DNA of 64,000 bases from sequence record OP380604.1; one strand, 5' to 3'. This document shows, in pieces, positions 6,084-57,278 of this stretch. Both the position numbers and the translations under genes were made by a program. Within the stretch, counting starts at the first letter, position 1, and every line of letters begins with the position of its first letter. The notes under the pieces are model-generated. The model was not told the DNA's origin. It searched no databases and worked only from the letters and a program-made list of their open reading frames with translations.

Positions 6084-6872
6084 TTAAAACGATTCGAGAT
6101 CATCGAATGCACTAACAGGAACAGGCTTAGTAAGCTTGTGCTCTGCTATTGGCGCACCGTTTCCGATAATGTTGTCAAACTCAACAACAAAATCTTCCGC
6201 CTCTTCGTTGAATGCGTCATCTTCTGCAAACTCGTCCACTGAGATATCCGCGCGTCCGTCAAGTGCCTTGATCTGAGATAGCGGGTCATCGTCTCCGAGC
6301 ACATAGCGATTTGGATCAAACTCAGGCTTGATTTCCTCACCACTGTAAATGAATTTCTGTGCCGTTACTTTATATTTGGCAAGTTGTTCGCGTTTTATAA
6401 CAGGCGAACTGGGCTCTACCCAAGTAACTTCAAACAGGCTGTTATTCAGTGGGAAATAAATCAGATCTCCTTCCTTAACTCGCTGTCCGTCTGCTTGGAT
6501 CTCAAACAGCTTAGGACTAACAGACAATGTGATTTCGTCATTGACTTGCATACCGAATTTCGAAAAGAAATCCCTCTGTCCACTATATTCATCGAAACTC
6601 TCCAAATACATCGCGACTTTATATGCTTTCTTAAACTTAGATTGCATATCTTCGCCAAAGATTCGGTCAAAGTTCACGAACTCACGACGAATATAATACA
6701 TTTCAACACCAGTCATCTGAATAGATTCAGCAACAAGCATTTCATGCAATGAAAGAGTCGGCTCGTATTCGTGTTTATTCACATACGGATTTAATACTTC
6801 GTTTTGATAAGTCTTACTGTACCCAGCTCCCGTTTCGAGCTGGGCGAACATGCTTTGATTACGTGCAAACAT
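6084..6872 (-). CDS. gp14: neck protein
   Basis: NPYVNKH, LVAESIQMTGVEMYYIRRE, FFSKFGMQVNDE, EGDLIYFP. Confidence 0.95.
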   Translation of the reverse strand: MFARNQSMFAQLETGAGYSKTYQNEVLNPYVNKHEYEPTLSLHEMLVAESIQMTGVEMYYIRREFVNFDRIFGEDMQSKFKKAYKVAMYLESFDEYSGQRDFFSKFGMQVNDEITLSVSPKLFEIQADGQRVKEGDLIYFPLNNSLFEVTWVEPSSPVIKREQLAKYKVTAQKFIYSGEEIKPEFDPNRYVLGDDDPLSQIKALDGRADISVDEFAEDDAFNEEAEDFVVEFDNIIGNGAPIAEHKLTKPVPVSAFDDLESF

Positions 6873-7796: not shown

Positions 7797-7811
7797 CTCG
7801 GCTAATCTCCT

Positions 7812-8009
7812 TTATTCTTTTCCTGGGTGTGCAATTGGCGCGGCGAACGGATCTTTAGCAACTTCAACGCGCTTTTCAATTGCATCAACGTCTTCTGAGC
7901 CAAAGTTATTATCGATACGCTTTTCCAGAATCTTTACTAACTGCTTTAGCATCTGCAACAGCACTTCGGTGCCAACTCGCTTGAGCATAAACAAAATAAT
8001 TGCTTGCAT
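7812..8009 (-). CDS. hypothetical protein (65 aa)
   Basis: co-oriented ORF with AAGGA SD in the late operon. Confidence 0.65.
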   Translation of the reverse strand: MQAIILFMLKRVGTEVLLQMLKQLVKILEKRIDNNFGSEDVDAIEKRVEVAKDPFAAPIAHPGKE

Positions 8010-8018
8010 TTTTAATCC

Positions 8019-8183
8019 TTAGCCTTTCAGCTTTAAGTTTGTTGTTTGGCTGTTTACCGGTTGGTATTTGCCGTTTACTTTAATATAGGCAGTTCCCGTC
8101 TTGTATTGTCCGTTTATTTTGAGACGCACTTCACAAGGCGTATTTGTGTTATTTATCTTGATAAACAAAAATCTTCCCTCCAT
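8019..8183 (-). CDS. small putative fibre-cap protein (54 aa)
   Basis: read manually: MEGRFLFIKINNTNTPCEVRLKINGQYKTGTAYIKVNGKYQPVNSQTTNLKLKG; fills the gap in the operon. Confidence 0.6.
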   Translation of the reverse strand: MEGRFLFIKINNTNTPCEVRLKINGQYKTGTAYIKVNGKYQPVNSQTTNLKLKG

Positions 8184-8210
8184 ATAACGGCGAGTTTCCC
8201 CGCCGTTCGA

Positions 8211-8816
8211 TTAATATTTGATGTATAGGTGTCCGTCTGGATATCCGTCGTTGTCATTTGGATCAGCGGTACCATAGGTATACACTGAGTTCATGTGTAT
8301 GACGAAATAATCCTTAAACAATCCCGTGTCGATCAAACGATAATCCGACCAATCATTATTTCCCGGCAAACTTTCGCGTCTAACAGTTATTTCATGATTG
8401 GATCCCTGAATCAAAGTCAATGAGGATTTATCGTCTCCGATAGTTACCTTGTTGTCATTCCCGAGTTTAATAAGACTCTTTCTTTCGCCTTCTGTGCTAA
8501 GTGCATTATAGCCGATGTTGTTCGGAACGGTAATGTTTTTCACTACCATACCAGACACATCCGCTTCAATCACGGGCTTAACACTTTTTGGTCCAAGATA
8601 GAAAGATTTGCCGTCTTGCGTTAACTCTATGACGTTTTTTACTCCGTCATTTGTTTCTGCATGAACTGTAAATCCACTGGGAATAACAATTTTGTTGTTT
8701 GAGTCTGCAAACAATAGAACGGCTTTCTTATTGCTGCCGTTCTGGATTATTTGTCCGAACTCGTTTCCAACATATTCATCGACTTTGGGTAGGTCGGAAA
8801 TTTTAATTGTAGGCAT
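8211..8816 (-). CDS. putative whisker/collar accessory fibre protein (201 aa)
   Basis: MPTIKISDLP N-terminus and TADPNDNDGYPDGHLYIKY C-terminus, both common in phage fibre proteins. Confidence 0.6.
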   Translation of the reverse strand: MPTIKISDLPKVDEYVGNEFGQIIQNGSNKKAVLLFADSNNKIVIPSGFTVHAETNDGVKNVIELTQDGKSFYLGPKSVKPVIEADVSGMVVKNITVPNNIGYNALSTEGERKSLIKLGNDNKVTIGDDKSSLTLIQGSNHEITVRRESLPGNNDWSDYRLIDTGLFKDYFVIHMNSVYTYGTADPNDNDGYPDGHLYIKY

Positions 8817-8825
8817 ATAGCCTCC

Positions 8826-10430
8826 TTAGGGCTTTTGGGTTTCGATTAACTTATCGTCCTCAGTACCCAACTGATCTCCCTTTTCGTCCTGGATCAATCG
8901 TCTAGGAGTAGGGAACTCGGAGATTTTTGTTTTTATTGTACTCACACTTCCGAATCGATTCTTATAAACTGCTTGATAAACAAGACTATAATCATAAGTA
9001 TCAGAAACAATAACACTTAGATTATTCGAGTTCGAATTCTCGATTGCTCCGTATTGAGTTCTCCATTCTATTGTGTCGTAATTGCTTCCGGATGATTTAA
9101 GCTCTACCGTCATACCAGATGTTCCGATATATTCAGAATCAGGTTGAACTGTAATCTTAGGCAGCAATGCGCCGAGCCACTCGTATTTCGTATCGTCTGA
9201 CCCAAAATCAACAGTCAACATATCAGGACTAGGAGTTTCACTCGAAATATTTCCCGTTCCTTCTTCGATGTTGAAAATATGGTTTCTTCCGTTTACGAAC
9301 ATACCGAATTGCTCAACTATGACTCCTTTAATAGGATACTGCTTACTACCGAACACAAAATTAGTAGCAGCAACAACCGAAGTTGTGTCTGGAATTCTAG
9401 CTATTAAATCTCCGTTTGCGTGTAATCTAATATTTCTAATGTATCCACCAGAAACATCATACCAGATTCCTGCACCAAATACCTGATTCTTCGGAATAGG
9501 AGTTATAATAGGTACTTCATGTGTAATAACGTTTTCTGCCATAACAAACAGCGTATTTTTAACGATATCAACTCCGATTCCGGAGGTCGAAATATCGTTA
9601 TTATATCCAATGATCATTATGCGATCCGATACATCATCAAGCAACTGAACACTAGACTCCAAATGATTTGTTCCTGCGATTGGAGGAAGCGTTTTATTCA
9701 GCTTCATGTATGTGTCTTTCATGATAATCGCATTGTAGTTGGCATCAACTGGAGTAGGCTGGTAAGCAAGCATAACACTCGACTTAGTTACCATGGGCTG
9801 ACTAACTTGGATTTCTCCACTGTCGTTGTAATCAACTCCAACACCGATATTAAACTGCACCAAACAATCTTTTAATGCTTTGAAAGTTGATTGCACTCTC
9901 ATACCTGCTTTCAATTCAGGAACAGTAGGAAACTGTGTAATGAACTGAATATATTCTTTCTGTTTATCAGATGAAACTCCGTCAACGTAGATATCAAATG
10001 ACTTTCTTCCTACTTGAAGATTAATAGAATGAACAAAAGCACTTGCGTTATACGTTTCACCAGCTTTAAGATAAATTCTAGTTCTAAAGAACATTCGACT
10101 TGTTGCCGCTTTGAATGTATACGCTCGGCTATATTCGTCCTCGCGATTCGAATAGAACGCATACGCATTTCCACCAACTTGAGGAGCATTAGAAAATGCG
10201 CTCCAGCCCGGTGGTGTAAATCCGATTACTCTTCCGTCCGCATACGTGAAATAATCTGTTCCGTTCAATAAACGGCTATTGATTAGCAAGTTTTCATCTT
10301 TTGGATCATAAGTTCTACGCCATGCTCCACCAGAATAAACCCAAGCAACGGCATTTCTCCAATATCCGTTATAAATTTTGGGGGCTGCATTATGCAGCAC
10401 CCCATTTTGATCAGCAATTCTAATTGGCAT
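8826..10430 (-). CDS. putative whisker-associated structural protein (beta-rich, Ig-like C-terminal region)
   Basis: 534 aa directly after wac; N-terminal AWVYSGGAWRR motif, C-terminal LIQDEKGDQLGTEDDKLIET motif. Confidence 0.6.
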   Translation of the reverse strand: MPIRIADQNGVLHNAAPKIYNGYWRNAVAWVYSGGAWRRTYDPKDENLLINSRLLNGTDYFTYADGRVIGFTPPGWSAFSNAPQVGGNAYAFYSNREDEYSRAYTFKAATSRMFFRTRIYLKAGETYNASAFVHSINLQVGRKSFDIYVDGVSSDKQKEYIQFITQFPTVPELKAGMRVQSTFKALKDCLVQFNIGVGVDYNDSGEIQVSQPMVTKSSVMLAYQPTPVDANYNAIIMKDTYMKLNKTLPPIAGTNHLESSVQLLDDVSDRIMIIGYNNDISTSGIGVDIVKNTLFVMAENVITHEVPIITPIPKNQVFGAGIWYDVSGGYIRNIRLHANGDLIARIPDTTSVVAATNFVFGSKQYPIKGVIVEQFGMFVNGRNHIFNIEEGTGNISSETPSPDMLTVDFGSDDTKYEWLGALLPKITVQPDSEYIGTSGMTVELKSSGSNYDTIEWRTQYGAIENSNSNNLSVIVSDTYDYSLVYQAVYKNRFGSVSTIKTKISEFPTPRRLIQDEKGDQLGTEDDKLIETQKP

Positions 10431-10440
10431 CTTTAGTTCC

Positions 10441-13400
10441 TTAGTTTACGAACTCAAAGAATACGTCACCTTCTGTTGGATTAGCCGGTGCGTTTGTAGC
10501 AAAGTCACCATAATAGTAACTCTGTACCCACTGACCGTTTCTACGAGAATAACGAATGTCGTTGCTAGGAACATCAAATGCGGAAGTGATTACCGCGTTT
10601 CCGTTAACATATGCGTTGATGCAATTCATTTGCAATTCAACGTTTGTATCACCAACAACAACTTGACTATTTCCAGCGACGTTATCTTTTACCGCAATTA
10701 CGTTGATTTCAGCGCCTTTCAACATACCTTTAACGGAAGTAAATGAGTTATCAACTGGTTGTGCCAATTGAATATCCATTACTTTGCCTTCAATCTTGGT
10801 ATATTGATTGTTTTGTCCAAGATGAACAAGATAATCAGCACCAACCTGTTCGGTGAAGCCAATATTTACGTTCTTAGACTTGTACGCTCCTGACGTATTT
10901 ACATCAGCGTTGGGGTCAATACCGTTGAACACTTCTGTCCAGTTGCCGTTACGACGGGCATAGTATTTTTGATCGCTAGGCGCATCGATACCGTCATGCC
11001 ATACTTTGTAAGAACTGTTATTGAAATCAACAAGCGGCTGTTTACCGAAATAAACTGCGGTGTTTTCATCACCAAGAACAATATCGTTTTCAAAGTCAAC
11101 TTTAACGATTGTACGAATTTCATCGGAAGTAGTCAGTCCCAACAATGCTTGCTCATTGCCCATTGTAAAGCTCTGAACTCTACCTTTGAATGTAATCGGA
11201 GATTTGCTGTTGTCGTATCCAATGCTAATAGCACCGGTTGCAAGAGGAGCAAATGCAGATACCAATCCATGGTCTGTCGTGTTGAAATTAATCGCAACGT
11301 TCGGACTCAGATTGATATTTTTTGAACCCAACGCTTCCCAAACAGAATTACCGTTTGTTGTTACGCGAACGTGAGGCAATCCGTTATTTGGGGCGTCATC
11401 AGCCAGTCCCTGTCCGTTTCCACCTGGGTTAAATGCTGTCCATGCTCCGTCTTTACGTGCGTAGAATGCACCGTCCTTTGGAGCGTCTAATCCGTCGTGC
11501 CACACTGTATACAGTGTGTTCGCTGAACCAGCAACGACTTTAACGGAACGAAGATCGTCGCCGAATGTTCTTAGTGCTGGACTTGCTTTAGTGTCACCAA
11601 CTTCAACATAATCTTTTGTAGCAAATACAGAAGCACCGACTTCATTAATAAGAACGTTCGCATCAGTATAACCGGTATAGTTTGCGCCAATTGCCAAACG
11701 AATTTTAGAAACTTCGCCAGCAAACTCAGTCAACATACCTTCGTCGGAAACGGTAACAGTTTTGTTCAGGAATCCCGACTTGATAACATTCTTGTTCCCA
11801 AGAGTTGTATCAGCAGTAATACCAACATCACGATTCAGCCTGAATCCAGTTCTAGGATCAATATCAGCAACATAATCCTTCAAGTTCAAAGAATGGATTA
11901 CTGTGCCAACGTTTGTACCAAATCTAACTACGAGCGAACTACCGGTATCGATTTTGAACTCGATTGGTTTATTGTTTCCAATAATGTGTTGAACATCACC
12001 AAACTTAATGACTTCTTGTGTTTTGAATTTAACACCAGGAATATCAATCTCATTCAATACTGTTCCTTTGATTTCAATCTCGGAGTTTTCTTGGCCGAAA
12101 ATTGTAACAGGAGCAAGTCCAGGTCTCAAATTGAAAGATACAGCGGATTGTCCGTCAAAGTTTCTCAGTGAACGATTTGATCCGATAACAAGATCGCTGT
12201 CAAACAGATTTCTCCATTCCCATTTATTGTCGATATAACGACGAACAAAAGACGCATCTACGTTTTGATCGGAAGTATCCAAAATAAATCCACTACCGGT
12301 TTTAAACGGAGTGTACATTTCGGTATACATACGCTGGTTAGTTGTTTTGATACCAAGCTTAACAATGTCAGAATCAGTATCTACTCCAGTTCCGTAAACG
12401 TCTGGATTAAGTTTAGCGACGTCTTCCTGTAGATCTCTAACGGCCGGAGTTGTCTCCAAGTTAACGAGATCCGTTACCGTTTTTACCATTCCTTCCAATC
12501 GACTTGCGTTATTCGCTTCTCTCAAATCAAGAGCGCGAACATCACCACGCAATCCGTCGGTAGGCTGAACACCAACAATAGATTCGAGTGTATCAAGACG
12601 CTGATCCGAACTAACATCAAAATCTTGTAGTGTTTTGATATCGGTAGTGTGTTTTGATACCGTATTAACGGTTGTGTTCAAGAGATTCTGATTTGCGCCA
12701 ACGTCACCACGAACGAGTTTGGTATATTCCCAAATGTTGTTTACTGTGATTTCTGTTCCGGCTTGATTCACATATTTGATCGGAAACTCAATCTTACCGG
12801 TGGCAGTATCATTATCACTCAATCTATCTTCGATATTAAGAGTTCGGGTTTCACCGTCTTTAATTCTTTGATATATTGTCTTATTGTTTTTGTCAGAAGA
12901 AGGACCAATTTCAGAACGAATATCACGAACGTTACGAATGAGAATATCAGGAGTATCTCCTTGCCAGAAACTTTCTAGGCTTTTAATTCTGTTTTCGTGC
13001 TGTACGGAACTCTCCCAGTTGCGCTCAACTTGACCCTTTACTCCCAAACCGGGAGCATTTACATCTGGATTACCGTCCTGATCGAAACCCTTGTAGTTAC
13101 CAAGCATCTTCTTGATATTAACGATTTGCGGGTCAACTGTGTCGGTAATACGCTTGTTGATTGCTTCCGTCTTTGCAACGTGCTCGATTTCATCGTCTTC
13201 AATTCGTTTCAATCTATCTTGATGTGTCTTGTTGACGATTTCTACCGCAGTCATTCGATCATATAGGTTTGTTCCGTCTCCCTGTGCATTCAGAATGCGA
13301 TCATGGGTTTCTGCCAAATCGATAACTTTGCTCAACGAGTCTTTTGTTTTATTCAATTCAACGTTAATAGCGTTAACGTTTTTCTGCACCTTAACCGAAG

Positions 13401-29797: not shown

Positions 29798-30353
29798 GAC
29801 GAACTCTCTCCATTCTACGAGTCAACATATCCAGAAAAGTCTGCAAGTCAGCCGGACTCAAAATAAAAATGTTTCTCTTGTTTTCATTCTCATTCAACTC
29901 ATGTTCAATCGCACTAACAGGAGCAAGCGCACCCGTGTGCTGAACAAATCTATGAAGTGTGTCTCCAATATCATACCAGTTCTTTGATCCAACAGGAAAC
30001 TCTTTCATTCTGTAATACCGTTTGCCGTCAGAGTCAACATGATATAATACCGTGTTTTCTTTGTCCGGTAGATTCTTATATTTTTGCGCGGCAGAGCTAT
30101 AAACTTGCTCCTGCGATTTAATCCATCCATGAAACGGATCATAGATATTATTCAACATCAACAGAATCCAGTAATACGAACTGTTTCCATAAAGTCTATG
30201 AGCCAGCAATTCGGGACGGGGATCACCCGTCACGAAATAACGACGCAATACGAAACTACCAGCGACTTCATTAAAATACTTACCGTAACTCTTAAAAATA
30301 TTCGCAGTTGGAATACCGTTGTAGTTAATCGGGTCAAAAAATTGCATCAACAT
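29787..30353 (-). CDS. gp53: baseplate wedge subunit (LysM-like)
   Basis: FFDPINY, RPELLAHRLYGNSSYYWILLMLNNIYDPFHGW, ENENKRNI. Confidence 0.95.
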   Translation of the reverse strand: MLMQFFDPINYNGIPTANIFKSYGKYFNEVAGSFVLRRYFVTGDPRPELLAHRLYGNSSYYWILLMLNNIYDPFHGWIKSQEQVYSSAAQKYKNLPDKENTVLYHVDSDGKRYYRMKEFPVGSKNWYDIGDTLHRFVQHTGALAPVSAIEHELNENENKRNIFILSPADLQTFLDMLTRRMERVRRGS

Positions 30354-31426
30354 TATTTGCTTTCCTTACTAGCATATGAGCCAAAGAAGAATTGACCGGA
30401 ATCTTGTGAGCCCAAATTCTTTGTCAGACTTTCCCAATATTCTTTGAACACTGGACGCAATTCGGTGAATGTTAGTTCCAAATCAATAGCAATTGGATCA
30501 CCGGCTGTTCCCTCGAATGAGTTATAAATCTGTTCCGGTGTACTTGTGATTCTAATATTCGTTAACGCACACGGCCCCATTGCAAACTTGGGAGTGTATC
30601 TGATTTCAGCCGACGCGGATTGGCTATTAACTCTCTCCTCAAGATACCACAGCGGAGGAACTTTTAGAACTTGGATACTCTCAGTACCACCACCCGCACC
30701 AATCGATCCAAGAGCGTTTGATCCACCAGTAATACTACCCACCATTTCGTTGATAGAAGTTGTTCCTGTAACGGATGCAGAGCTATAAATCAGAAACGCA
30801 CGTATGATCTGTCCAACTTCTTTCAATTCAGCCAGATTCTTTGGACGCAAGTTATATAGAAACGTCTGTGATCGCAAAGATGTATTTTTATACATGTTCG
30901 CGCTTCTGCTACCCAACACCTTGCCACTCAGTTGCGCATTATATTGTTGAGTCGCTTTACCTAAATTAACAGTTACTTGTTGAATCGCAGTTTTCGCAAA
31001 TGCCACACCAAGATCTTTACCAGTTTCAATGAGTCCAGATCCAGCAGAGCCAGCGTAATTCATCATCATATCTTGCAAGAATCCACCGTCATTATCGCTG
31101 TATTCGTGACCGATATTCTGATTAAGATTTGGCATATACATCTGAATAACGGCAATAGTCTTCTCGTTGAACTTACCACTAACGCTATTCAAGCTTCGGG
31201 TCTGAATATCTGCATTGCTCAAACCTTGAGCAGCGGCATCAACGGCATAAAAGCATAGGTAGTTCTTGTGTCTGTCTGCCTCTCCCTTCATTGCGAGAGG
31301 ATATTGTAGTGCTTGAATCCCTGTCTCTCCACTTGGCGAGCTAAGAAATTCACCAATAAATTTACCAGCGGCGTCTGAAATCGTCTTGACACCGTTGTTT
31401 AACATAGTGATCGTTTTGTTGGCCAT
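30353..31426 (-). CDS. gp48: baseplate tail-tube cap
   Basis: LQYPL, IQMYMP, RSQTFLYNLRPKNLAE, FAMGPCALTNIRI, IDLELTFTE. Confidence 0.8.
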   Translation of the reverse strand: MANKTITMLNNGVKTISDAAGKFIGEFLSSPSGETGIQALQYPLAMKGEADRHKNYLCFYAVDAAAQGLSNADIQTRSLNSVSGKFNEKTIAVIQMYMPNLNQNIGHEYSDNDGGFLQDMMMNYAGSAGSGLIETGKDLGVAFAKTAIQQVTVNLGKATQQYNAQLSGKVLGSRSANMYKNTSLRSQTFLYNLRPKNLAELKEVGQIIRAFLIYSSASVTGTTSINEMVGSITGGSNALGSIGAGGGTESIQVLKVPPLWYLEERVNSQSASAEIRYTPKFAMGPCALTNIRITSTPEQIYNSFEGTAGDPIAIDLELTFTELRPVFKEYWESLTKNLGSQDSGQFFFGSYASKESK

Positions 31427-31445
31427 ATTAAGCTCCTTTTATGAT

Positions 31446-31459
31446 TATTTAGCTAAATA
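31446..31459. promoter_or_regulatory. back-to-back late promoters (palindrome TATTTAGCTAAATA) for gp48 and gp4
   Basis: perfect 14-bp palindrome giving GCTAAATA on both strands between divergent genes. Confidence 0.7.
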
Positions 31460-31477
31460 CAGTTAAAGGAGTTAGTT

Positions 31478-31948
31478 ATGGCAGAAACATATAAAGGCAA
31501 GTTTGTGCCTGAAAACAAAGAAAAATATAGAGGCGATGCCTCGAAAATAACATATCGTAGTAGCTGGGAACTTTTCATCATGAAAATGCTCGATAGAAAC
31601 CCAGAAGTCAAGTGGTGGAATTCAGAGGAAACTGTGATTCCTTATTTCTCAGAAGCAGACGGAAAGAAGCGCCGGTACTTCATGGACATGACGGTATGCT
31701 GGAAAAACGGAGATATTTCACTCTGGGAAGTTAAGCCTCGGAAAGAGACAATGCCTCCACAAATGCCAGCCAGAAATACGGCAGCGGCAAAGAAACGATT
31801 TGCACAAGAAGTATATACTTGGGGCGTTAATACATCAAAGTGGAAAGCCGCGATTAAAATATGCGAGCAAAAAGGTTGGAGATTTAATATAATCACGGAA
31901 GATACCTTGAAACGGATGGGATTCAAAGGGGTGAAAGATGATATTTGA
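31478..31948 (+). CDS. gp4: head completion nuclease
   Basis: YKGKFVPENKEKYRGD, YRSSWE, WNSEETVIPYF, RYFMD, EVKP, VNTSKWKAA. Confidence 0.96.
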   Translation: MAETYKGKFVPENKEKYRGDASKITYRSSWELFIMKMLDRNPEVKWWNSEETVIPYFSEADGKKRRYFMDMTVCWKNGDISLWEVKPRKETMPPQMPARNTAAAKKRFAQEVYTWGVNTSKWKAAIKICEQKGWRFNIITEDTLKRMGFKGVKDDI

Positions 31949-32930
31949 GGAAGTTCAGATTCCGGAAACTCCGGCTGAAAAGCGCAATAAGAAAGCTTGG
32001 ATTGATATCGGCGTCCGTTTTCTTGACGCAAAGAAAAAGAATCCAAGTTTGACTGTGAAGAAGTTCGCGGACGATAACGGACTTAAATACGAAACGTTTG
32101 GACGTGCTATGCGTCGTTATAAAGACGATATCAAAGAATATTACAGCGCGATTAATCCAAACAAGAATAAAGCGCAATGGGTAGAGCTTGGTGTTGCTTA
32201 CCTAAGAGCTAAGGAGAAAGGTATTACAATCTCCCAATTCGCAGATGATAAGAATCTCAATAAAGAAACCATGAGTCGTGCTTTCAGAAAATTCAGGGAT
32301 GATATCATCATCAAGAAGAATTTGGAAGATAGCATGAAGAATAAGTCCAAGTTGACGGCAAAGCAGAAATATGATTTGCTGAAACAGGATTTCAATGCTC
32401 AAGTAAAGCTAAGAACTCGGGACAGTGTTCAGAAGAATGAGAAGAAATCTAACGAGTGGTTTACTGATATTATCAAAAAGAACGTTCGTGGATTCAGGCC
32501 GAATAAGCCACAGATTGGCAAACTGTATACCTACATATATGACGCGAAGCATAAAGACACGTTGCCATATTGGGACGTATATCCGCTTATTGTTTATCTT
32601 GGTCCGAGTTTAAGATACCCAGGATTAATGATGGGCTTGAACTTGCACTATATTCCGCCGAAAGCACGTAAAGACTTCTTGGAAGAGCTTTTGAAATATG
32701 CCAGCACGGATCGTATTACCAATAAAACTTCGTTGAAGATTAACTGGGACAAAGTTAAATCGATGCGTGGCGCAGAGCATATGATCAAGGCATATATTCC
32801 TCAGAGAATTAAAGGTGGTATGATTGAGATCAAACCACAAGACTGGGTAAATGCGGTGTTTTTACCGACGCAAAAGTTTTTGTCTGGTGGCAAACCGTTT
32901 GGTGCACAGAAAGTCTGGAAGGGCTATTAA
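31938..32930 (+). CDS. gp2: DNA end protector protein
   Basis: YDAKHKDTLPYWDVYPLIVYLG, GLNLHYIPPKAR, IKAYI. Confidence 0.95.
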   Translation: MIFEEVQIPETPAEKRNKKAWIDIGVRFLDAKKKNPSLTVKKFADDNGLKYETFGRAMRRYKDDIKEYYSAINPNKNKAQWVELGVAYLRAKEKGITISQFADDKNLNKETMSRAFRKFRDDIIIKKNLEDSMKNKSKLTAKQKYDLLKQDFNAQVKLRTRDSVQKNEKKSNEWFTDIIKKNVRGFRPNKPQIGKLYTYIYDAKHKDTLPYWDVYPLIVYLGPSLRYPGLMMGLNLHYIPPKARKDFLEELLKYASTDRITNKTSLKINWDKVKSMRGAEHMIKAYIPQRIKGGMIEIKPQDWVNAVFLPTQKFLSGGKPFGAQKVWKGY

Positions 32931-37859: not shown

Positions 37860-38546
37860 ATGATATTCGGTATTCATGGTAAAAAGCGCAGCGGTAAAGA
37901 TACCGCTGCTAAATTCATTGCGGAATATGACAACTCAATCACCGTTTGTTCGCTTGCTACTCCTATAAAACGGGCATTGGAATTTGCTTCAATGAAAACC
38001 CGTGCTGGATTTAGCTACGCTGATATTGACGGCAAAGGAAAAGATAGAGACGTTGTTGAGTTTAAGCTTACTCGCCAATTCTGGCTTGAAGCAATAAAAT
38101 ATCTCAATGATACCTATATCAAATTCAGCAATGACCAATTTGACGTACTAAATAACATTATAATCGGACTCGACGTTGAACGTCCTATTACAATGCGACG
38201 GATGATGCAGTTGCTAGGTACCGATATTATCGTTGATCGTGTTGATCGCGATTATTGGATCAAGTGTATTGAATCGGAAGTCCGAGTTTGGGGACTCGAT
38301 GTTGTTATTCCGGACATTAGACAAGAACATGAAATCGAATACGTGAGAAAACACGGATTAATGTTCTTTGTTTATCGCGATACAAAAATGTGTGATAATC
38401 ATATCACAGAACGGGGTCTGACTCCGTTAGAACATGAACCAATTATTCATAACGATAGCACATTAGATAGCTTCCGTTATGACGTTTTAAACACTTATAA
38501 GGAATTGAAATGCAAGAACAAGTTCAACAACTGCAAGCACAACTGA
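37860..38546 (+). CDS. gp1: dNMP kinase
   Basis: IHGKKRSGKDT P-loop, RRMMQLLGTDI, VIPDIRQEHE, HITERG. Confidence 0.95.
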   Translation: MIFGIHGKKRSGKDTAAKFIAEYDNSITVCSLATPIKRALEFASMKTRAGFSYADIDGKGKDRDVVEFKLTRQFWLEAIKYLNDTYIKFSNDQFDVLNNIIIGLDVERPITMRRMMQLLGTDIIVDRVDRDYWIKCIESEVRVWGLDVVIPDIRQEHEIEYVRKHGLMFFVYRDTKMCDNHITERGLTPLEHEPIIHNDSTLDSFRYDVLNTYKELKCKNKFNNCKHN

Positions 38547-38743
38547 ACACCCTGAAAGTTCGTCTGTTTGACGCACAGGAAGCCCGTACCCAAGAAACTG
38601 AATTCTATCAGGGTTTCTTTGCTCAACTGGCTAAAGAACTGGGCCTGGAAGGCGAAGCTGCTACCCAACCGGAAGCTTATCTGAAAGCAATCGCTGAACT
38701 CAAAGCTCCGAAAGCAGTTGACGGCGAGCTGGTAACCGAGTAA
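38510..38743 (+). CDS. gp57A: tail fibre chaperone
   Basis: LKVRLFDAQE coiled coil; between gp1 and gp57B. Confidence 0.8.
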   Translation: MQEQVQQLQAQLNTLKVRLFDAQEARTQETEFYQGFFAQLAKELGLEGEAATQPEAYLKAIAELKAPKAVDGELVTE

Positions 38744-39237
38744 TGTTAAAGTCGTTTTCTGAATTCACAGAAGCGACTAAGCAAGACACGCGCGGCACTT
38801 ATGTAGCAGTACGTTACAAGCCGCGCACTGCAATGGCAATTGTTAGAAGATGCAGGGAAATGGGGATACCTAATCTTGTCCCCTATGATAAGCTGCACAC
38901 TACATTGATCTACTCAAGAAAATACTTGCCCGAATTTCAAGCAAGTGGTAAGATCGATAAAGTGTTGCAAGGCGTCATGATACCTGATATCTTTGAAACT
39001 CAAAGCGGCAAACGTGCTCTTGTGCTCAAGCTCACCGACCCATGGTTCGGTGCTAGACACAAAGAGATCAGAGAAAAGCATGGGGCGACTCATGATTATC
39101 CTGACTATCATCCACACATTACCGCTAGTTATGATGTTGGTCCTGATTTTGTTTTGCCAAAAAGCTTTACAATAGATTACAAGCTATGTATACTTGAAGA
39201 GTACACAGAAGATTTAGATTTTGACTGGAGTCCCTGA
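38743..39237 (+). CDS. gp57B: 2H phosphoesterase family protein
   Basis: two HxT/S motifs: LHTTLIYSR and YHPHITASYD. Confidence 0.92.
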   Translation: MLKSFSEFTEATKQDTRGTYVAVRYKPRTAMAIVRRCREMGIPNLVPYDKLHTTLIYSRKYLPEFQASGKIDKVLQGVMIPDIFETQSGKRALVLKLTDPWFGARHKEIREKHGATHDYPDYHPHITASYDVGPDFVLPKSFTIDYKLCILEEYTEDLDFDWSP

Positions 39238-39261: not shown

Positions 39262-39363
39262 CGGGGATTAGTTCAGTGGGATAGAACAACTGCCTTCTCC
39301 TGTGCTTTCCAACGAGAGTACAGAAGAAGCAGTGGGTCACTGGTTCGAATCCAGTATCCTCGG
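39262..39363 (+). tRNA. tRNA-Arg-like gene with 28-nt hairpin insert in the anticodon loop
   Basis: CGGGGAT/ATCCTCG acceptor, D arm with A20, ACTGC/GCAGT stem, T arm; loop CTTCT[28 nt]AA. Confidence 0.8.
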
Positions 39364-42863: not shown

Positions 42864-42874
42864 AAACAAAGATA

Positions 42875-42938
42875 GGAATGAGTTCAGCAACACTTAAAAA
42901 AGCAAATTATTGGAAATATGCCTTAAAAGTTCATTCCG
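42875..42938 (+). ncRNA. helix-CAGCAA RNA 2
   Basis: GGAATGAGTT/AGTTCATTCC helix then CAGCAA; follows the third promoter. Confidence 0.55.
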
Positions 42939-42963
42939 TTTCTTATTTGAAAGTCGTTATTGC

Positions 42964-43045: not shown

Positions 43046-43070
43046 CAATGATGATTTAAAGATTTGTCAA

Positions 43071-43180
43071 TTGGAACATTGCAGCAAACAACACTTATTT
43101 TTCCTTTCACGAAAAACGATGAGGTTCGATTCCTCAGCTCGCGACAAACGAGTCCTCGGACGGTAGAAACAGTGTTCCAG
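43071..43180 (+). ncRNA. circularly permuted tRNA-like RNA (YrlA/Y-RNA architecture)
   Basis: 11-bp closing helix, CAGCAA, anticodon-like arm (TTC), T arm, capped acceptor, D arm, in that order. Confidence 0.7.
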
Positions 43181-43184
43181 ATAT

Positions 43185-43748: not shown

Positions 43749-43824
43749 GGGGGTTTAGCTCAGTTGGGAGAGCAACTGGTTTGCAACCAGTAGGTCAAGG
43801 GTTCGAATCCCTTAACTTCCACCA
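43749..43824 (+). tRNA. tRNA-Ala(TGC)
   Basis: ACTGG-TTTGCAA-CCAGT, G3:U70, CCA. Confidence 0.95.
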
Positions 43825-43831
43825 AATTTAA

Positions 43832-43906
43832 GCGGGATTAGCTCAGAGGTAGAGCGTCAGCCTTCCAAGCTGTTCGTCGCCGATTCGAATTCGGTATCCC
43901 GCTCCA
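43832..43906 (+). tRNA. tRNA-Gly(TCC)
   Basis: loop CTTCCAA, U73, CCA. Confidence 0.93.
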
Positions 43907-45420: not shown

Positions 45421-45494
45421 GGGGACGTAGATAACTACACAATCGCAGGTCACTGGGATCTGAGATACGGGTGGAAATCCCGTCGTCTCCACCA
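45421..45494 (+). ncRNA. atypical tRNA-like RNA with Ala acceptor identity
   Basis: GGGGACG/CGTCTCC-ACCA (G3:U70, A73), T loop TGGAAAT, D loop without GG, loop CACTGGG. Confidence 0.65.
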
Positions 45495-47025: not shown

Positions 47026-47101
47026 AGGGGATTCGCCTAGTTGGCCCAAGGCACCGGGTTTGATCCCGGTATCACAAGTTCGAATCTTGTATCCCCCGCC
47101 A
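47026..47101 (+). tRNA. tRNA-Gln(TTG)-like with a 6-nt anticodon loop
   Basis: CCGGG-TTTGAT-CCCGG; G73, CCA. Confidence 0.75.
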
Positions 47102-52745: not shown

Positions 52746-53345
52746 ATGGCGAAACTTTTTTTCACGCATAGTGCGATGAACGTGGGCAAGAGCACTCAAT
52801 TACTGCAAGTGGCTTTCAACTACAACGAGAGAAATCAAAACGTTCTGCTGTACAAACCTGCGTTTGACACTAGAACAGAAGGTACGATTGGATCACGTAT
52901 CGGTATCCAGCGTGAGTGTCGCTGTGTGCATGTTGACGAAAACATGTTTACAATGATCGAAAAAGAGAGTAAACTGTCCGATATCGCCTGTGTTCTTGTT
53001 GATGAAGCACAGTTCCTGACTGAAAAACAAGTGTGGGAACTGTCCGACGTTGTTGACAAGCTGGATATCCCTGTTATGTGCTACGGACTGCGTACCGATT
53101 TTCTCGGTAACTTGTTCCCTGGCTCTAGGGCATTACTTTCGATTTCAGATGAAATTAGACAACTGTCTGGTATCTGTGATTGTGGTAGAAAATCCTGTAT
53201 GGTAGCTCGCGTTGATGATAACGGCAATGTTATCCGTCGAGGTGAACAAATTTGCATTGGGGCTGAACAACGTTACATTTCGTTCTGCCGCAAGTGCTGG
53301 AAAAACAAACTGTCCTATGATTGGGACAAATTCAAACAAACCTGA
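52746..53345 (+). CDS. tk: thymidine kinase
   Basis: HSAMNVGKST, VLVDEAQF, CYGLRTDF, CDCG, YISFCRKC. Confidence 0.97.
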   Translation: MAKLFFTHSAMNVGKSTQLLQVAFNYNERNQNVLLYKPAFDTRTEGTIGSRIGIQRECRCVHVDENMFTMIEKESKLSDIACVLVDEAQFLTEKQVWELSDVVDKLDIPVMCYGLRTDFLGNLFPGSRALLSISDEIRQLSGICDCGRKSCMVARVDDNGNVIRRGEQICIGAEQRYISFCRKCWKNKLSYDWDKFKQT

Positions 53346-53358
53346 AAGAGGTAATTCT

Positions 53359-54795
53359 GTGTCTAATTTTATGAATGCAATGGTACAAGCTCAAGCCCGC
53401 ACTGCTAACGGTGCTGTCACTAACTACACCACTGGCGACAAGTGTCTGAATCTGTTTTCTCAGATTGGTTCCTCTCGCGGGAAAGATCTGACCCAGATGT
53501 TTGTTGATGCTTATACCGAGTCTCCTGACTGGGCTGTTCGCATTCTGCAATGGGCTCGCGATATTCGCGGTGGTGCCGGTGAACGTGAACAATTCATCCG
53601 CCTGCTGAAAGTCCTTGCGCATCGTCACCCTGTTGACGCCACCGTAGTTCTGATGAACACTCCTGAAATCGGTCGCTTCAAAGACGTGGTAGCAATGTTC
53701 AATTCTCCGATTCAGGACGCTGCTGTGGCTATCATGGTTGATGCAATCATGACCAAGCAAAACGGTCTTGCTGCAAAGTGGGCACCTCGGAAGGGCAAAG
53801 AAGCCGGTATTCTGGCCAAAGCTATGCGAATGACTGCTAAAGAATATCGTCACACTATCGTCCGTATGTCGAACACCGTTGAACAAAAGATGTGTGCTCG
53901 TCAGTGGGACGGTATTGAGTTCGGTAAACTGCCGTCTGTTGCATCTGCTCGATATCAGAAAGCATTCCTGAAAAACGCGAACGAGCGTTATGTTGCTTAT
54001 CTTGAGTCTCTGAAAAAGGGTGAGGCTAAGATCAACGCTGCTGCGGTTTATCCGTATGACATGATCAAATCCCTGCGTACCGGTTCTTCTGTTGCTGCTG
54101 ATGCACAATGGAAAGCACAACGCGACTGGATGGCTGGCTCCACTGAAAACGTAATCGCGATGGTTGACGTTTCTGGCTCTATGGGCACTCCGACCGCTGT
54201 TGCTGGCTTGTCTGCTATGGACATCGCGATTTCTCTGGGTCTGTACATCGGCGAACGCTCGCGCGGTGTGTTCAAGAACGAAGTGATTACCTTCGATGAT
54301 AATCCTGAGTTCTACAACATCAAAGCGAAAGGCGACGATCTGCAAAGCATGGTGAATCATCTGGGACGCGCTCCGTGGGGTGGCTCTACCAACTTTGCTG
54401 GTGCATTCAAGATCATTCTTGATCGCGCTGTACGCAATCGAGTTCCGCAAGAAGATATGCCGACTATGATGGTTGTCTTGTCTGACATGGAATTCAACGT
54501 TGCTGATGGTGGCTATAGTGGTTACTATCGTATGCGTGACCGTGAGCCTACCAACTTTGAGGTGATTCGTCAGACTTACCGCGACGCTGGTTACGAAATG
54601 CCGAAACTGGTGTTCTGGAATCTTTGCCCGCGTCCGACTAACAATCCGGTGACCAAAGATGATCAAGGCACTGCTCTTGTTTCTGGTTTTAGTCCCGCAA
54701 TCATGGAGACAATCCTGAGTGCGAAAGAGTTTAACCCGATGCAAATCATGCTCGACAAGATCATGAGCGACCGTTACGTCGGTATCGACTTCTAA
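53359..54795 (+). CDS. DUF2828-type helical plus vWA protein (Ro60/TROVE-like architecture)
   Basis: GTG start after GAGGT; RDIRGGAGERE, AAKWAPR, EQKMCARQW, VDVSGSM MIDAS, TFDDNP, WGGSTNF, SDMEF, LVFWNL. Confidence 0.85.
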   Translation: MSNFMNAMVQAQARTANGAVTNYTTGDKCLNLFSQIGSSRGKDLTQMFVDAYTESPDWAVRILQWARDIRGGAGEREQFIRLLKVLAHRHPVDATVVLMNTPEIGRFKDVVAMFNSPIQDAAVAIMVDAIMTKQNGLAAKWAPRKGKEAGILAKAMRMTAKEYRHTIVRMSNTVEQKMCARQWDGIEFGKLPSVASARYQKAFLKNANERYVAYLESLKKGEAKINAAAVYPYDMIKSLRTGSSVAADAQWKAQRDWMAGSTENVIAMVDVSGSMGTPTAVAGLSAMDIAISLGLYIGERSRGVFKNEVITFDDNPEFYNIKAKGDDLQSMVNHLGRAPWGGSTNFAGAFKIILDRAVRNRVPQEDMPTMMVVLSDMEFNVADGGYSGYYRMRDREPTNFEVIRQTYRDAGYEMPKLVFWNLCPRPTNNPVTKDDQGTALVSGFSPAIMETILSAKEFNPMQIMLDKIMSDRYVGIDF

Positions 54796-54800
54796 AAAAA

Positions 54801-54851
54801 GCCACCTTCGGGTGGCTTTTTTATTGACAACTGATTTGGATATGAGATAAT
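54801..54851 (+). promoter_or_regulatory. terminator followed by early promoter
   Basis: GCCACC-TTCG-GGTGGC-TTTTTT then TTGACA..GATAAT. Confidence 0.75.
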
Positions 54852-56878: not shown

Positions 56879-56888
56879 TGTTTTGTTG

Positions 56889-57005
56889 TCGCGATTAGTT
56901 CAGCGGGAGAGCGCCTCTGATCGCAGAGAAGTATCGGGACCGGTTCGATTCCGTTAAGTGTGGGCACATTGAGAAACGTCACTGGTTCGAATCCAGTATC
57001 GCGAC
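56889..57005 (+). ncRNA. tRNA-like RNA X1 with enlarged anticodon domain
   Basis: acceptor, D and T arms intact; 68 nt between D and T arms; acceptor helix extended to 14 bp; no CCA. Confidence 0.8.
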
Positions 57006-57022
57006 AACAAACAACATTATGC

Positions 57023-57136
57023 TGGCGGTTCGTCTAATTGGTAGGACACTGTAAAATTCATTCTGATAAGAATGTTTTCCGCAATAAATACTCGCCTGTT
57101 AAGCCTGTAATCTGGGTTCGAGGCCCAGACCGCCAG
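57023..57136 (+). ncRNA. tRNA-like RNA X2 with enlarged anticodon domain
   Basis: acceptor, D and T arms intact; 64 nt between D and T; 20-bp flanking helix; CTGTTAA heptamer. Confidence 0.8.
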
Positions 57137-57156
57137 CATAGTGTTGTTAAAAATTT

Positions 57157-57278
57157 GGGGAAGTAGCTCAGTGGTAGAGCAGTAGTCGCAAAAAGCGGAA
57201 TCTGATTAAGATTCTTTACCGCAAACCCTTGCAAAATCAAACTGTTGGTCGTGGGTTCGAATCCCACCTTCTCCGCCA
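57157..57278 (+). ncRNA. tRNA-like RNA X3 with enlarged anticodon domain
   Basis: GGGGAAG/CTTCTCC-GCCA, canonical D and T arms, 54-nt loop in the GTAGT/ACTGT stem. Confidence 0.82.

What the first reader, a model, noticed from the sequence alone, without database searches (positions are those of the whole stretch)
53359..54795. DUF2828/vWA gene as candidate Ro60-like protein of a phage RNP system
Seen: 478-aa ORF with a helical N-terminal region and a C-terminal vWA domain with MIDAS DVSGS, flanked by tk and a terminator. Established: Ro60/Rsr proteins are TROVE plus vWA rings that bind Y RNAs and act in RNA decay or repair. Inference: DUF2828 has a similar architecture, and this genome also carries a YrlA-like RNA and several tRNA mimics, so a Ro60-like/tRNA-mimic module, possibly countering host tRNA or RNA damage defences, is a testable hypothesis. 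I am not aware of an RNA partner assigned to DUF2828.
Basis: partly seen in the sequence, partly recalled or inferred. Interest (0 to 1): 0.72.

Follow-up and report, generated by a model that had tools for sequence, protein, structure and literature searches.

The report
Ro60-like phage protein with partner RNAs
This phage gene encodes a distant relative of the Ro60 RNA-binding protein, and across many unrelated phages the same gene sits next to a previously undescribed family of small RNAs that look like Ro60's known "Y RNA" partners, so an uncharacterised protein family now has a concrete, testable RNA partner.

Summary
Window 53359-54795 (+) is a 478-aa gene (GTG start, good SD) after tk, ending at a strong intrinsic terminator. 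It has a helical N-half and a vWA domain with a complete invariant MIDAS (DVSGS...T...D). The window is Aeromonas phage avDM12-TAAL (T4-like).

For the full-length AlphaFold model, the top nine PDB matches are all Ro60 (TM 0.55-0.63). PHROG 850 holds both this protein and a canonical phage Ro60. Profile comparison links the last helix plus vWA to Ro60 (E 1.5e-5).

Caveats: Pfam TROVE is not matched, the helical domain alone finds no Ro60, and a closed ring could not be measured. "Ro-like RNA-binding protein" is already the annotation of family members in mycobacteriophages.

New here is an RNA family. It has a 7-9 bp stem, then CAGCAA, either as a ~60-nt hairpin or carrying a circularly permuted tRNA-like body (YrlA topology; sub-threshold Rfam YrlA hits). 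It flanks DUF2828 genes within 500 nt in 52 of 80 viral loci and within about 350 nt in 7 of 7 other phage lineages checked.

In this window the copies lie 2.3 kb downstream and 10 kb upstream. Function is inferred, not shown.

The parts
53359..54795 (+). DUF2828/DUF7788 gene, 478 aa: helical N-domain (about residues 1-260) plus vWA domain with MIDAS D270/S272/S274/T344/D376. Ro60-like fold.
54795..54822 (+). Intrinsic terminator closing the tk-DUF2828 unit
52746..53345 (+). Thymidine kinase, the upstream neighbour (context only)
57017..57142 (+). tRNA-like RNA, non-permuted form. It has an 11-bp terminal acceptor-type stem, a D-arm and a T-arm. The anticodon arm is replaced by hairpin CATTCT-GATA-AGAATG followed by UUUUCCGCAA.
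57157..57275 (+). tRNA-like RNA with a 7-bp acceptor stem and an encoded CCA. A 54-nt insert replaces the anticodon loop: hairpin GAATCT-GATTA-AGATTC, then UUUACCGCAA, plus two more NGCAA motifs. Aeh1 annotates its homologue as a 122-nt tRNA-Val.
43070..43182 (+). Circularly permuted CAGCAA unit (YrlA topology). Order: terminal stem GGAACA/TGTTCC, CAGCAA, T-arm, closed acceptor-like hairpin, degenerate D-arm.
   Evidence: 48.2 bits
42873..42940 (+). Mini CAGCAA hairpin: stem GGAATGA/TCATTCC, then UUCAGCAA and an A/U-rich loop, with no tRNA body
   Evidence: 29.5 bits
56884..57012 (+). Third tRNA-like RNA of the downstream trio. It has a 12-bp terminal stem and two T-arm-like hairpins but no CNGCAA motif. 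Whether it belongs to the module is uncertain.

Best explanation
The gene encodes a divergent member of the Ro60 (Rsr) kind of RNA-binding protein: an alpha-helical repeat domain joined to a MIDAS-containing vWA domain. This is shown at the level of predicted fold and profile similarity.

Its likely partners are a family of small phage RNAs that share one module. The module is a 7-9 bp stem with conserved (A/U)GGA(U/C)...(A/G)UCC(U/A)G, then 2-4 nt, then single-stranded CAGCAA (CCGCAA in this phage). The RNA family and its linkage to the gene are shown. Binding is inferred by analogy with the Ro60-binding stem and GNCGAA motif of Y RNAs.

The module occurs in two forms. One is a ~60-nt hairpin, like YrlB. 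The other encloses a circularly permuted tRNA-like body in the order T-arm, loop-closed acceptor stem, D-arm, like YrlA. In this Aeromonas phage two copies have the un-permuted, tRNA-like order.

Inferred mechanism: the protein binds the stem/CAGCAA module, and the tRNA-like body presents a tRNA shape to tRNA-handling enzymes such as nucleases, ligases like RtcB, or RNase P and CCA-adding enzyme. The particle would then supervise, repair or shield tRNAs and other structured RNAs during infection. That fits the gene's habitual place beside phage tRNA clusters.
For: Protein:
- In Foldseek against PDB, the top nine hits are all Ro60/TROVE, including phage phiLo Ro60 9KOP. E is 1e-8 to 8e-6 and TMq 0.47-0.63 over 520-575 columns. 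The next hits are vWA only.
- A Gordonia phage Ro protein is also matched in BFVD.
- PHROG 850 'RNA-binding protein' matches this protein (2e-165, positions 1-474 of 476) and Bxz1 Ro60 (2.8e-140; Pfam TROVE + vWA_Ro60).
- hhalign of DUF2828 against TROVE gives E 1.5e-5 to 2.8e-5 over the last helix plus vWA, including the shared C-terminal VSGF motif.
- Pfam vWA_Ro60 is hit by 19 of 75 members.
- Ro60 is the best full-size PDB sequence hit of the family profile, at E 0.3.

RNA family:
- 39 units align. RNAalifold finds four helices, and 20 of 22 pairs show compensatory changes.
- 96.4% of cells are paired, against 60% in shuffles and 32-44% when slid. Covariation is 0.89 against 0.21.
- The order terminal stem, motif, T-arm, closed acceptor, D-arm equals the published YrlA order (10.1101/312249).
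- Rfam YrlA RF02553 hits the units next to DUF2828 in Enterococcus phage PEF1 (47.8 bits, E 7e-8; also 35.7 bits) and in Mycobacterium phage Lumos (39.3 bits, E 2e-5), all below the gathering score of 69.
- My model also finds the canonical YrlA just upstream of Bxz1 Ro60.

Linkage:
- 52 of 80 DUF2828 loci have a same-strand module within 500 nt.
- Module density is 1.80/kb at 0-250 nt and 0.09-0.11/kb beyond 2 kb. Background is about 0.05-0.07/kb.
- In 7 of 7 further lineages modules lie 20-340 nt from the gene: Felixounavirus EC6, mycobacteriophage Lumos, Listeria LP-125, Campylobacter CPX, Staphylococcus 6ec, Enterococcus PEF1 and Bacillus Thrax2.
- Reverse search from the RNA pattern finds DUF2828 in 9 of 120 loci, against 1 of 115 control tRNA loci. 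The element is always on the same strand and usually within 700 nt.
- The T4 tRNA region and 50 kb of Bxz1 contain no CAGCAA module.

tRNA and repair context.
Against: - No binding data exist.
- Pfam TROVE is not matched by any of 75 members even at E<=5.
- The N-domain profile comparison is not significant (E 0.34).
- The N-domain modelled alone has no significant PDB match, and Ro60 is not among its top 50. The Ro60 match therefore rests on the vWA domain plus the relative placement of a shorter (about 260 vs about 360 aa) helical domain.
- Ring closure and a central hole were not measured.
- The units aligned for covariation were chosen by requiring a terminal stem, which biases helix 1. 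It does not bias the acceptor-like helix or the D-arm.
- Modules also occur in several copies inside tRNA clusters, and in 20 of 115 control tRNA loci with no DUF2828 in the short flank held. Genome-level co-occurrence was not established.
- About a third of DUF2828 loci show no module within 500 nt.
- In this very window the gene is bracketed by tk and a terminator, and the nearest modules are 2.3 kb and 10 kb away, in other transcription units.
- Many upstream modules end 20-70 nt before the start codon, which also fits a cis-acting leader.
Confidence: 0.6

Rival explanations
1. The CAGCAA hairpins are cis-acting signals of the tRNA/early region: leader operators, processing or stabilising sites, or cassette boundaries like the promoter-stem-loop cassettes of T4-type hyperplastic regions. 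They are not stand-alone partner RNAs. DUF2828 is either unrelated to them or binds them only to autoregulate its own translation.
For: - Upstream modules end a median of 72 nt (quartile 23 nt) before the DUF2828 start, often directly followed by GUU and a Shine-Dalgarno sequence.
- Downstream modules precede the next gene.
- Modules are multi-copy inside tRNA clusters and present in 20 of 115 control tRNA loci.
- No transcript ends are known.
Against: - The full units carry a complete, covarying tRNA-like body that a leader or terminator does not need, and they are recognised by Rfam's YrlA model.
- In Lumos, three units sit between the stop codon and a terminator, downstream of the gene.
- In Staphylococcus phage 6ec, three minis follow the gene with no tRNA cluster nearby.
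- Module density falls about 17-fold within 2 kb of this one gene. No other neighbouring protein family is conserved in more than 17 of 80 loci.
Confidence: 0.2
2. DUF2828 is a vWA/MIDAS protein-binding scaffold, for example a chaperone cofactor or a binder of a host protein. It has a generic alpha-solenoid N-domain. The Ro60 resemblance is superficial and RNA is not its ligand.
For: - The N-domain alone matches only generic ARM/HEAT repeats (best E 0.75).
- There is no TROVE sequence signal.
- The MIDAS is intact and invariant, as in protein-binding vWA domains.
- ClpP and DnaJ are neighbours in some loci.
Against: - Full-length matches to Ro60 reach TMq 0.55-0.63. The vWA domain is only 45% of the chain, and vWA-only hits give 0.20-0.26.
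- Ro60's own vWA also keeps its MIDAS (PMC12135203).
- PHROGs merges the two families over their full length.
- YrlA-type RNAs flank the gene as they flank rsr.
- ClpP and DnaJ neighbours occur in at most 17 of 80 loci of one lineage.
Confidence: 0.12
3. The tRNA-like RNAs work on their own, as decoys or substitutes for host tRNAs attacked by anticodon nucleases or as decayed tRNA genes. They merely share the tRNA-cluster neighbourhood with DUF2828.
For: - The window holds at least seven aberrant tRNA-like elements scattered over 39-57 kb.
- Canonical tRNA density around DUF2828 is flat over 0-5 kb.
- Two window RNAs keep tRNA order, and one has an encoded CCA.
Against: - Mini units have no tRNA body yet are the form most tightly linked to the gene: 48 of 80 distinct modules within 500 nt are shorter than 80 nt.
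- The element-to-tRNA ratio is 0.32 within 500 nt of the gene and about 0.07 further away.
- The CAGCAA plus GGA/UCC module is conserved from actinophages to T4-like phages, which decay would not preserve.
Confidence: 0.08

Closest known systems
Bacterial Ro60 (Rsr) with YrlA/YrlB Y RNAs (Salmonella, Mycobacterium smegmatis; Chen et al. 2014, PMC4201824; YrlA structure 10.1101/312249)
   Same: - A helical domain plus a MIDAS vWA protein.
- RNAs encoded within a few kb on the same strand.
- One RNA form with a permuted tRNA-like body (T-arm, closed acceptor, D-arm) and one short form without it.
- A conserved short motif next to the 5'/3' stem.
- Occasional linkage to RtcB.
   Different: - The N-domain is about 100 aa shorter and is not matched by Pfam TROVE.
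- The motif is CAGCAA after a GGA/UCC stem, not GNCGAA(N)G.
- Units often occur in 2-4 tandem copies.
- The system lives in phage tRNA clusters.
- In the Aeromonas phage the tRNA-like copies are un-permuted, and one ends in CCA.
Phage Ro60 systems: Thermus phage phiLo phiRo60 + Yrl1/Yrl2 (PMC12135203, PDB 9KOP/9L5Y) and mycobacteriophage Bxz1 gp220 + YrlA/YrlB-like RNAs
   Same: - A phage-encoded Ro60-type protein with Y-like RNAs in the adjacent intergenic gap.
- 9KOP is among the top fold matches.
- Same PHROG (850).
   Different: - Those proteins are canonical TROVE + vWA_Ro60 by Pfam, with CGAA-type motifs.
- BLASTP between Bxz1 gp220 and this protein reaches only E 0.003, over the junction and MIDAS.
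Circularly permuted tRNA genes (Cyanidioschyzon merolae; cited in 10.1101/312249)
   Same: The gene order is 3' half, loop-closed acceptor, 5' half, with the ends in the anticodon-stem position.
   Different: The phage units have no anticodon loop. They carry the CAGCAA module instead, and nothing suggests they mature into decoding tRNAs.
T4 stable RNAs rnaC/rnaD (species 1 and 2) in the tRNA cluster
   Same: Small stable RNAs of unknown function encoded inside a T4-type tRNA cluster.
   Different: The CAGCAA model finds no module in the T4 tRNA region. T4 was not among the listed tblastn hits, though only 45 of 710 records were listed.

Membership tests
Ro60 / TROVE family (Pfam PF05731 + PF25045) | C-terminal vWA domain with a MIDAS (DxSxS...T...D) | tested here: met
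   VWA_2 1.1e-5 and DUF7788 2.6e-51. D270, S272, S274, T344 and D376 are invariant in 75 homologues.
Ro60 / TROVE family (Pfam PF05731 + PF25045) | The vWA domain is specifically of the Ro60 type (PF25045) | tested here: inconclusive
   19 of 75 members hit vWA_Ro60, with best E 1.2e-4, below the curated cut-off. hhalign gives probability 74-80% and E 1.5e-5 to 2.8e-5. The shared ...VSGF... motif follows the last strand.
Ro60 / TROVE family (Pfam PF05731 + PF25045) | N-terminal TROVE (HEAT-like repeat) domain recognisable by sequence | tested here: not met
   No PF05731 hit at E<=5 in any of 75 members. N-domain hhalign gives E 0.34, with only a 26-column N-terminal stretch aligned.
Ro60 / TROVE family (Pfam PF05731 + PF25045) | Overall fold: a helical-repeat ring closed by the vWA domain | tested here: inconclusive
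   For the full-length model, the top nine PDB hits are all Ro60 (TMq 0.47-0.63). The N-domain alone gives no Ro60 hit. The coordinates could not be inspected for a hole. The N-terminal hairpin gains confidence (pLDDT about 55 to about 85) only when the vWA domain is present.
Ro60 / TROVE family (Pfam PF05731 + PF25045) | Y RNA-type ncRNA encoded nearby on the same strand (criterion of Chen 2014: within 4 kb) | tested here: met
   Family-wide: and sub-threshold Rfam YrlA hits. In this window: tRNA-like CCGCAA RNAs 2.2-2.5 kb downstream on the same strand.
Ro60 / TROVE family (Pfam PF05731 + PF25045) | Binds Y RNA and misfolded RNA | not testable with these tools
   Needs RIP/CLIP, EMSA or a structure.
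YrlA (Rfam RF02553) | Score at or above the family gathering threshold (69 bits) | tested here: not met
   The best DUF2828-linked units score 47.8, 39.3, 35.7 and 28.4 bits. There is no hit in the window (E<=1 over the whole window; E<=10 only over 38.8-43.4 kb).
YrlA (Rfam RF02553) | Permuted tRNA-like order: 5'/3' stem, T stem-loop, closed acceptor stem, D stem-loop | tested here: met
   RNAalifold and pair counts on 39 units. The order was compared with 10.1101/312249.
YrlA (Rfam RF02553) | GNCGAA(N0-1)G motif near the 5' end | tested here: not met
   The motif is C(A/C)GCAA, invariant in the alignment. Bxz1 YrlA has GCCGAGAG / GGCCGAAGG.
PHROG 850 'RNA-binding protein' | Full-length match to the PHROG profile | tested here: met
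   E 2.3e-165, positions 1-474 of 476.

The most novel reading that the evidence does not exclude
DUF2828 proteins and CAGCAA RNAs may form a second, unrecognised branch of Ro60-Y RNA particles that is far more common in viruses than canonical Ro60. Homologues occur in at least 710 sequenced phage genomes from seven or more unrelated lineages, and fold matches exist in giant viruses. Each gene would be paired with its own short and tRNA-like Y RNAs and wired to phage tRNA clusters and RNA-repair genes. If so, the same reading may extend to the uncharacterised DUF2828 proteins of plants and fungi. The aberrant 'tRNA genes' annotated in many phage genomes would then be protein-bound regulators rather than decoders.
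Probability: 0.5. Interest if true: 0.85.

Novelty: new variant of a known kind. Interest (0 to 1): 0.78.

Why it matters
Ro60-Y RNA particles are a conserved but still poorly understood RNA-surveillance device. Only one phage example has been studied biochemically.

If DUF2828 is a Ro60-type protein with its own RNA family, three things follow:
- A domain of unknown function with thousands of members gains a testable role.
- A new structured RNA class absent from Rfam is defined. It has two forms, one of them a permuted tRNA mimic.
- The long-noted odd tRNA-like genes and stable RNAs of large phages get a candidate protein partner.

The link to tRNA clusters, RtcB and RNA ligases points to tRNA protection or repair in the phage-host arms race. 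That can be tested in tractable systems, such as Felix O1-type coliphages and mycobacteriophages of cluster L.

Tried and rejected
- tmRNA idea. UAGUCGCAAA in the 57157 RNA resembles the E. coli tmRNA resume region, as I recall it. Reading from GCA gives no consistent short tag ORFs across family members (sequences), so I dropped it.
- MotA-box idea. The reverse complement of UUACAGCAAA resembles a T4 middle-promoter box, but it would face against all the genes, so I dropped it.
- Conserved protein neighbours. Clustering ORFs within 6 kb of DUF2828 in 80 loci found nothing in more than 17 loci: ClpP, DnaJ, RNase HII, a metallophosphoesterase and Mom.
- N-domain homology. hhalign in local, low-mact and global modes and an isolated-domain fold search both gave nothing specific.
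- PADLOC gave no match. NCBIfam gave only a weak cobaltochelatase vWA hit.
- Supplements of Chen 2014 and Iyer 2021 are not held. I could not check whether any DUF2828-type phage was in their lists.
- Literature. 'DUF2828' occurs in five papers, none about function.
- Genome-level co-occurrence could not be done, because only partial loci are retrievable. The control set therefore shows only that modules also occur in tRNA loci whose short flanks lack DUF2828.
- Artefact. Plain tandem tRNAs score up to about 43 bits with my model (window 43760-43874; T4). Such hits were not counted.
Full report
**1. What is at the coordinates**

The window is identical to Aeromonas phage avDM12-TAAL. It is 92-98% identical to the T4-like Aeromonas phages Aeh1 and Ah1.

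The open frame runs 53212-54795 (+). The 478-aa version starts at GTG 53359, 5 nt after AAGAGG, and matches the N-termini of homologues.

Thymidine kinase ends at 53345. A strong intrinsic terminator (54795-54822, -17.7 kcal/mol, z = -4.9) follows the stop codon. A near-consensus sigma-70 promoter comes next.

Pfam gives DUF2828 plus DUF7788, with a weaker VWA_2 match. The MIDAS residues D270, S272, S274, T344 and D376 are invariant in 75 homologues.

**2. Is the protein Ro60-like?**

An AlphaFold2 model built on 75 homologues is confident (pLDDT 88.7, pTM 0.88).

Evidence for a Ro60-like protein:
- Against the PDB, the nine best matches are all Ro60: Xenopus, human, and the Thermus phage phiLo protein 9KOP. 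E is about 1e-8 and TM-scores are 0.47-0.63 across the whole chain.
- Everything below those nine is an isolated vWA domain with TMq of about 0.25. The vWA domain is 45% of the chain, so the helical half must contribute to the match.
- PHROG 850, named 'RNA-binding protein', matches this protein and the canonical TROVE + vWA_Ro60 protein gp220 of mycobacteriophage Bxz1, each end to end.
- Profile-profile comparison of DUF2828 with a TROVE alignment is significant (E 1.5e-5 to 2.8e-5). It covers only the last helix plus the vWA domain, including a shared C-terminal VSGF motif.
- Pfam vWA_Ro60 is weakly hit by 19 of 75 members.
- Ro60 is the best full-size hit of the family profile in PDB sequences, at E 0.3.

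Evidence against membership:
- Pfam TROVE is never matched.
- The N-domain profiles do not align significantly (E 0.34).
- The N-domain modelled alone (pLDDT 84.5) finds only generic ARM/HEAT proteins at E>0.7.

I could not inspect the coordinates, so a closed ring is inferred, not shown. One hint is that the N-terminal beta-hairpin is confident only when the vWA domain is present.

My reading is a divergent Ro60-superfamily protein with a shortened helical domain. It should not be filed as a TROVE-family member in the Pfam sense.

This reading is not new in databases. RefSeq calls the Aeh1, Ah1 and PX29 orthologues 'RNA-binding protein'. SEA-PHAGES calls the 30%-identical mycobacteriophage homologues 'Ro-like RNA binding protein'. 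I found no paper on DUF2828 function.

**3. Distribution and neighbourhood**

The family is very large: 8819 clusters at 50% identity.

tblastn finds it in 710 phage records. These include Felixounavirus, KVP40-like vibriophages, Campylobacter, Listeria, Staphylococcus, Enterococcus and Bacillus phages, cluster L mycobacteriophages, jumbo phages and a Lak phage. Fold matches also exist in giant viruses.

In 80 metagenomic viral loci, no protein-coding neighbour recurs in more than 17 loci. tRNA genes do recur:
- 42 of 80 loci have tRNAs within 10 kb, always on the same strand.
- 27 of 80 have one within 2 kb.
- The gene can lie before, after or inside the cluster.

The same holds in EC6, LP-125, CPX, PEF1 and Thrax2. 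In Listeria phage LP-125 the gene is followed by RtcB and a second RNA ligase. In Lumos it is preceded by a band-7 protein and a tRNA.

**4. The RNA family**

I first looked for T-arms that ARAGORN does not assign to a tRNA. There were 69 in 1.25 Mb, all on the gene strand, where about 3 were expected.

Many of these carry C(A/C)GCAA upstream. Extending the sequences showed a common plan, in this order:
- 5' strand of a terminal stem
- 2-4 nt
- CAGCAA
- an A/U-rich spacer
- T-arm
- a 7-bp acceptor-like stem closed by a loop
- D-arm
- an A-rich linker
- 3' strand of the terminal stem, then GUU

Thirty-nine such units align well. RNAalifold independently predicts the four helices, and 20 of 22 pairs show compensatory changes. 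Pair counts give 96.4% paired cells, against 60% in shuffles and 32-44% when slid.

The units were selected for having a terminal stem, so that helix is biased. The acceptor-like helix and the D-arm are not.

This order is that of YrlA, which the literature describes as resembling a circularly permuted tRNA with a closed acceptor stem.

A covariance model of the units gave three further results:
- It finds a short form of about 60 nt that keeps only the stem, CAGCAA and an A/U-rich loop. This parallels YrlB.
- It finds the canonical YrlA just upstream of Bxz1 Ro60 through the shared tRNA-like part.
- All of its hits are on the gene strand.

Rfam's own YrlA model hits the full units beside DUF2828 in Enterococcus phage PEF1 and mycobacteriophage Lumos. 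E is 7e-8 to 2e-4, below the curated threshold. No other Rfam family covers them.

Conserved letters in the module are (A/U)GGA(U/C) in the 5' strand, (U/A)(A/U)CAGCAA(A/U), and (A/G)UCC(U/A)G(U) in the 3' strand. Canonical YrlA has GNCGAA instead.

**5. Linkage of RNA and gene**

I used a strand-aware search for stem plus motif, with shuffled and opposite-strand controls giving a background of about 0.05-0.07/kb.

| Measure | Value |
|---|---|
| Module density 0-250 nt from gene | 1.80/kb |
| Module density 250-500 nt | 0.62/kb |
| Module density beyond 2 kb | about 0.1/kb |
| Loci with a same-strand module within 500 nt | 52 of 80 |
| Modules upstream of gene (within 500 nt) | 50, in 27 loci |
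| Modules downstream of gene (within 500 nt) | 33, in 25 loci |

Canonical tRNA density is flat over the first 5 kb. The modules are therefore tied to the gene more tightly than tRNAs are.

In seven further lineages taken from annotated genomes, modules lie close to the gene in every case:

| Phage | Modules near the DUF2828 gene |
|---|---|
| Lumos | mini, full (90 bits), mini, then a terminator, starting 42 nt after the stop codon |
| Staphylococcus 6ec | three minis starting 20 nt after the stop codon |
| Campylobacter CPX | two minis ending 22 nt before the start codon |
| Listeria LP-125 | three units in the upstream gap |
| Enterococcus PEF1 | two full units (86 and 94 bits) and a mini within about 560 nt upstream |
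| Bacillus Thrax2 | three units in the upstream gap |
| Felixounavirus EC6 | minis from 340 nt downstream and a full unit at 1 kb |

Searching viral contigs from the RNA side (CAGCAA...T-arm) recovers DUF2828 in 9 of 120 loci, against 1 of 115 control tRNA-Met loci. These homologues are only 23-38% identical to the query. The element is on the same strand in all of them and mostly within 700 nt.

The T4 tRNA region and 50 kb of Bxz1 contain no module.

Limits:
- Modules are multi-copy in tRNA clusters and appear in 20 control loci whose short flanks lack the gene.
- Whole-genome co-occurrence could not be computed.

**6. This window**

The gene is not flanked by modules here. The relatives found are:
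- a mini unit at 42873-42940
- a permuted unit at 43070-43182 (48 bits)
- two tRNA-like RNAs at 57017-57142 and 57157-57275, 2.2-2.5 kb downstream on the same strand

In the last two, the same stem plus UUU(U/A)CCGCAA module replaces the anticodon arm, but the ends are in the acceptor stem. One has an encoded CCA. Aeh1 annotates its counterpart as a 122-nt tRNA-Val.

Rfam YrlA does not recognise any of these (E<=1 over the whole window; E<=10 only over 38.8-43.4 kb).

**7. Mechanism and rivals**

Shown:
- the fold-level likeness to Ro60
- the RNA family and its structure
- the gene-RNA and gene-tRNA linkage

Inferred:
- The protein binds the stem/CAGCAA module.
- The tRNA-like body recruits tRNA-handling enzymes.
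- The particle acts in tRNA or structured-RNA surveillance, repair or shielding during infection.

The phiLo study shows that a phage Ro60 with adjacent Y-like RNAs can bind host PNPase and damp it (PMC12135203). That is a plausible precedent.

The main rival is that the hairpins are cis-acting leaders or processing sites. This fits their position just before start codons. It does not explain the covarying tRNA body or the post-gene arrays in Lumos and 6ec.

A protein-scaffold reading of the vWA domain, and a stand-alone decoy reading of the RNAs, are less likely but not excluded.

**8. Verdict**

The protein's Ro-like nature is already implicit in annotation. The paired CAGCAA RNA family and its tight linkage appear undescribed. 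This is a new variant of a known kind of system.

Noticed in passing
window 38743-39237 (+): Acb1 anti-CBASS 2H phosphodiesterase (Pfam PF23474, 1.3e-35), preceded by dNMP kinase (37860-38546). The order matches T4 gene 1, 57B, tRNA region.
   Followed up: partly
window 39262-39363 (+): tRNA-like RNA (Rfam tRNA 53.7 bits) that ARAGORN does not call. It has a roughly 15-bp terminal stem, D and T arms, and a ~20-bp hairpin in place of the anticodon arm. It has no CNGCAA motif and folds well (z = -5.1).
   Followed up: partly
window 56884-57012 (+): tRNA-like RNA with a 12-bp terminal stem and two T-arm-like hairpins. It is the first of a tandem trio with the two CCGCAA RNAs and has no CNGCAA motif.
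   Followed up: partly
window 46618, 50032, 47026-47101, 45421-45494 (+): More aberrant tRNA-related elements: orphan T-arms at 46618 and 50032, an ARAGORN 'tRNA-???' with a 2-nt anticodon, and a weak tmRNA-like Rfam hit (E 4.7e-5).
   Followed up: no
L001 (Aeh1 NC_005260) 10852-10973: RefSeq annotates the homologue of window 57157-57275 as a 122-nt tRNA-Val(CAC). It has a 54-nt insert in place of the anticodon loop, so the annotation is probably wrong.
   Followed up: partly
window 54824-54851 (+): Near-consensus sigma-70 promoter (TTGACA, 16 nt, TG-GATAAT; 11 of 12 matches) directly after the DUF2828 terminator. It drives the next gene at 54875.
   Followed up: no
L322 (Listeria phage LP-125) 7855-9066 and 10626-11512; L321 (Lumos) 2759-3830: DUF2828 lies 1.3 kb upstream of an RtcB-like ligase and 4 kb upstream of a second RNA ligase in LP-125. 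In Lumos a band-7 protein and tRNA-Tyr lie upstream. LeBron gp53 (Ro-like, 472 aa) is moderately toxic when overexpressed in M. smegmatis (PMC13148394).
   Followed up: partly
L320 (Escherichia phage EC6 NC_027369) 7404-10669: The RefSeq record shows a 3.3-kb unannotated gap after the DUF2828 gene. ARAGORN finds 25 tRNA genes in the locus, 18 of them in that gap. The tRNAs are simply not annotated in this record.
   Followed up: yes
window 43760-43874; L327 (T4) 6323-6437: The CAGCAA covariance model scores plain tandem tRNAs up to about 43 bits. It reads the T-arm of one tRNA, the two acceptor strands and the D-arm of the next. This artefact must be filtered in any census.
   Followed up: yes
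window about 30000-32000: GC skew changes sign from negative to positive near 31 kb, marking a switch of coding strand between two gene blocks.
   Followed up: no
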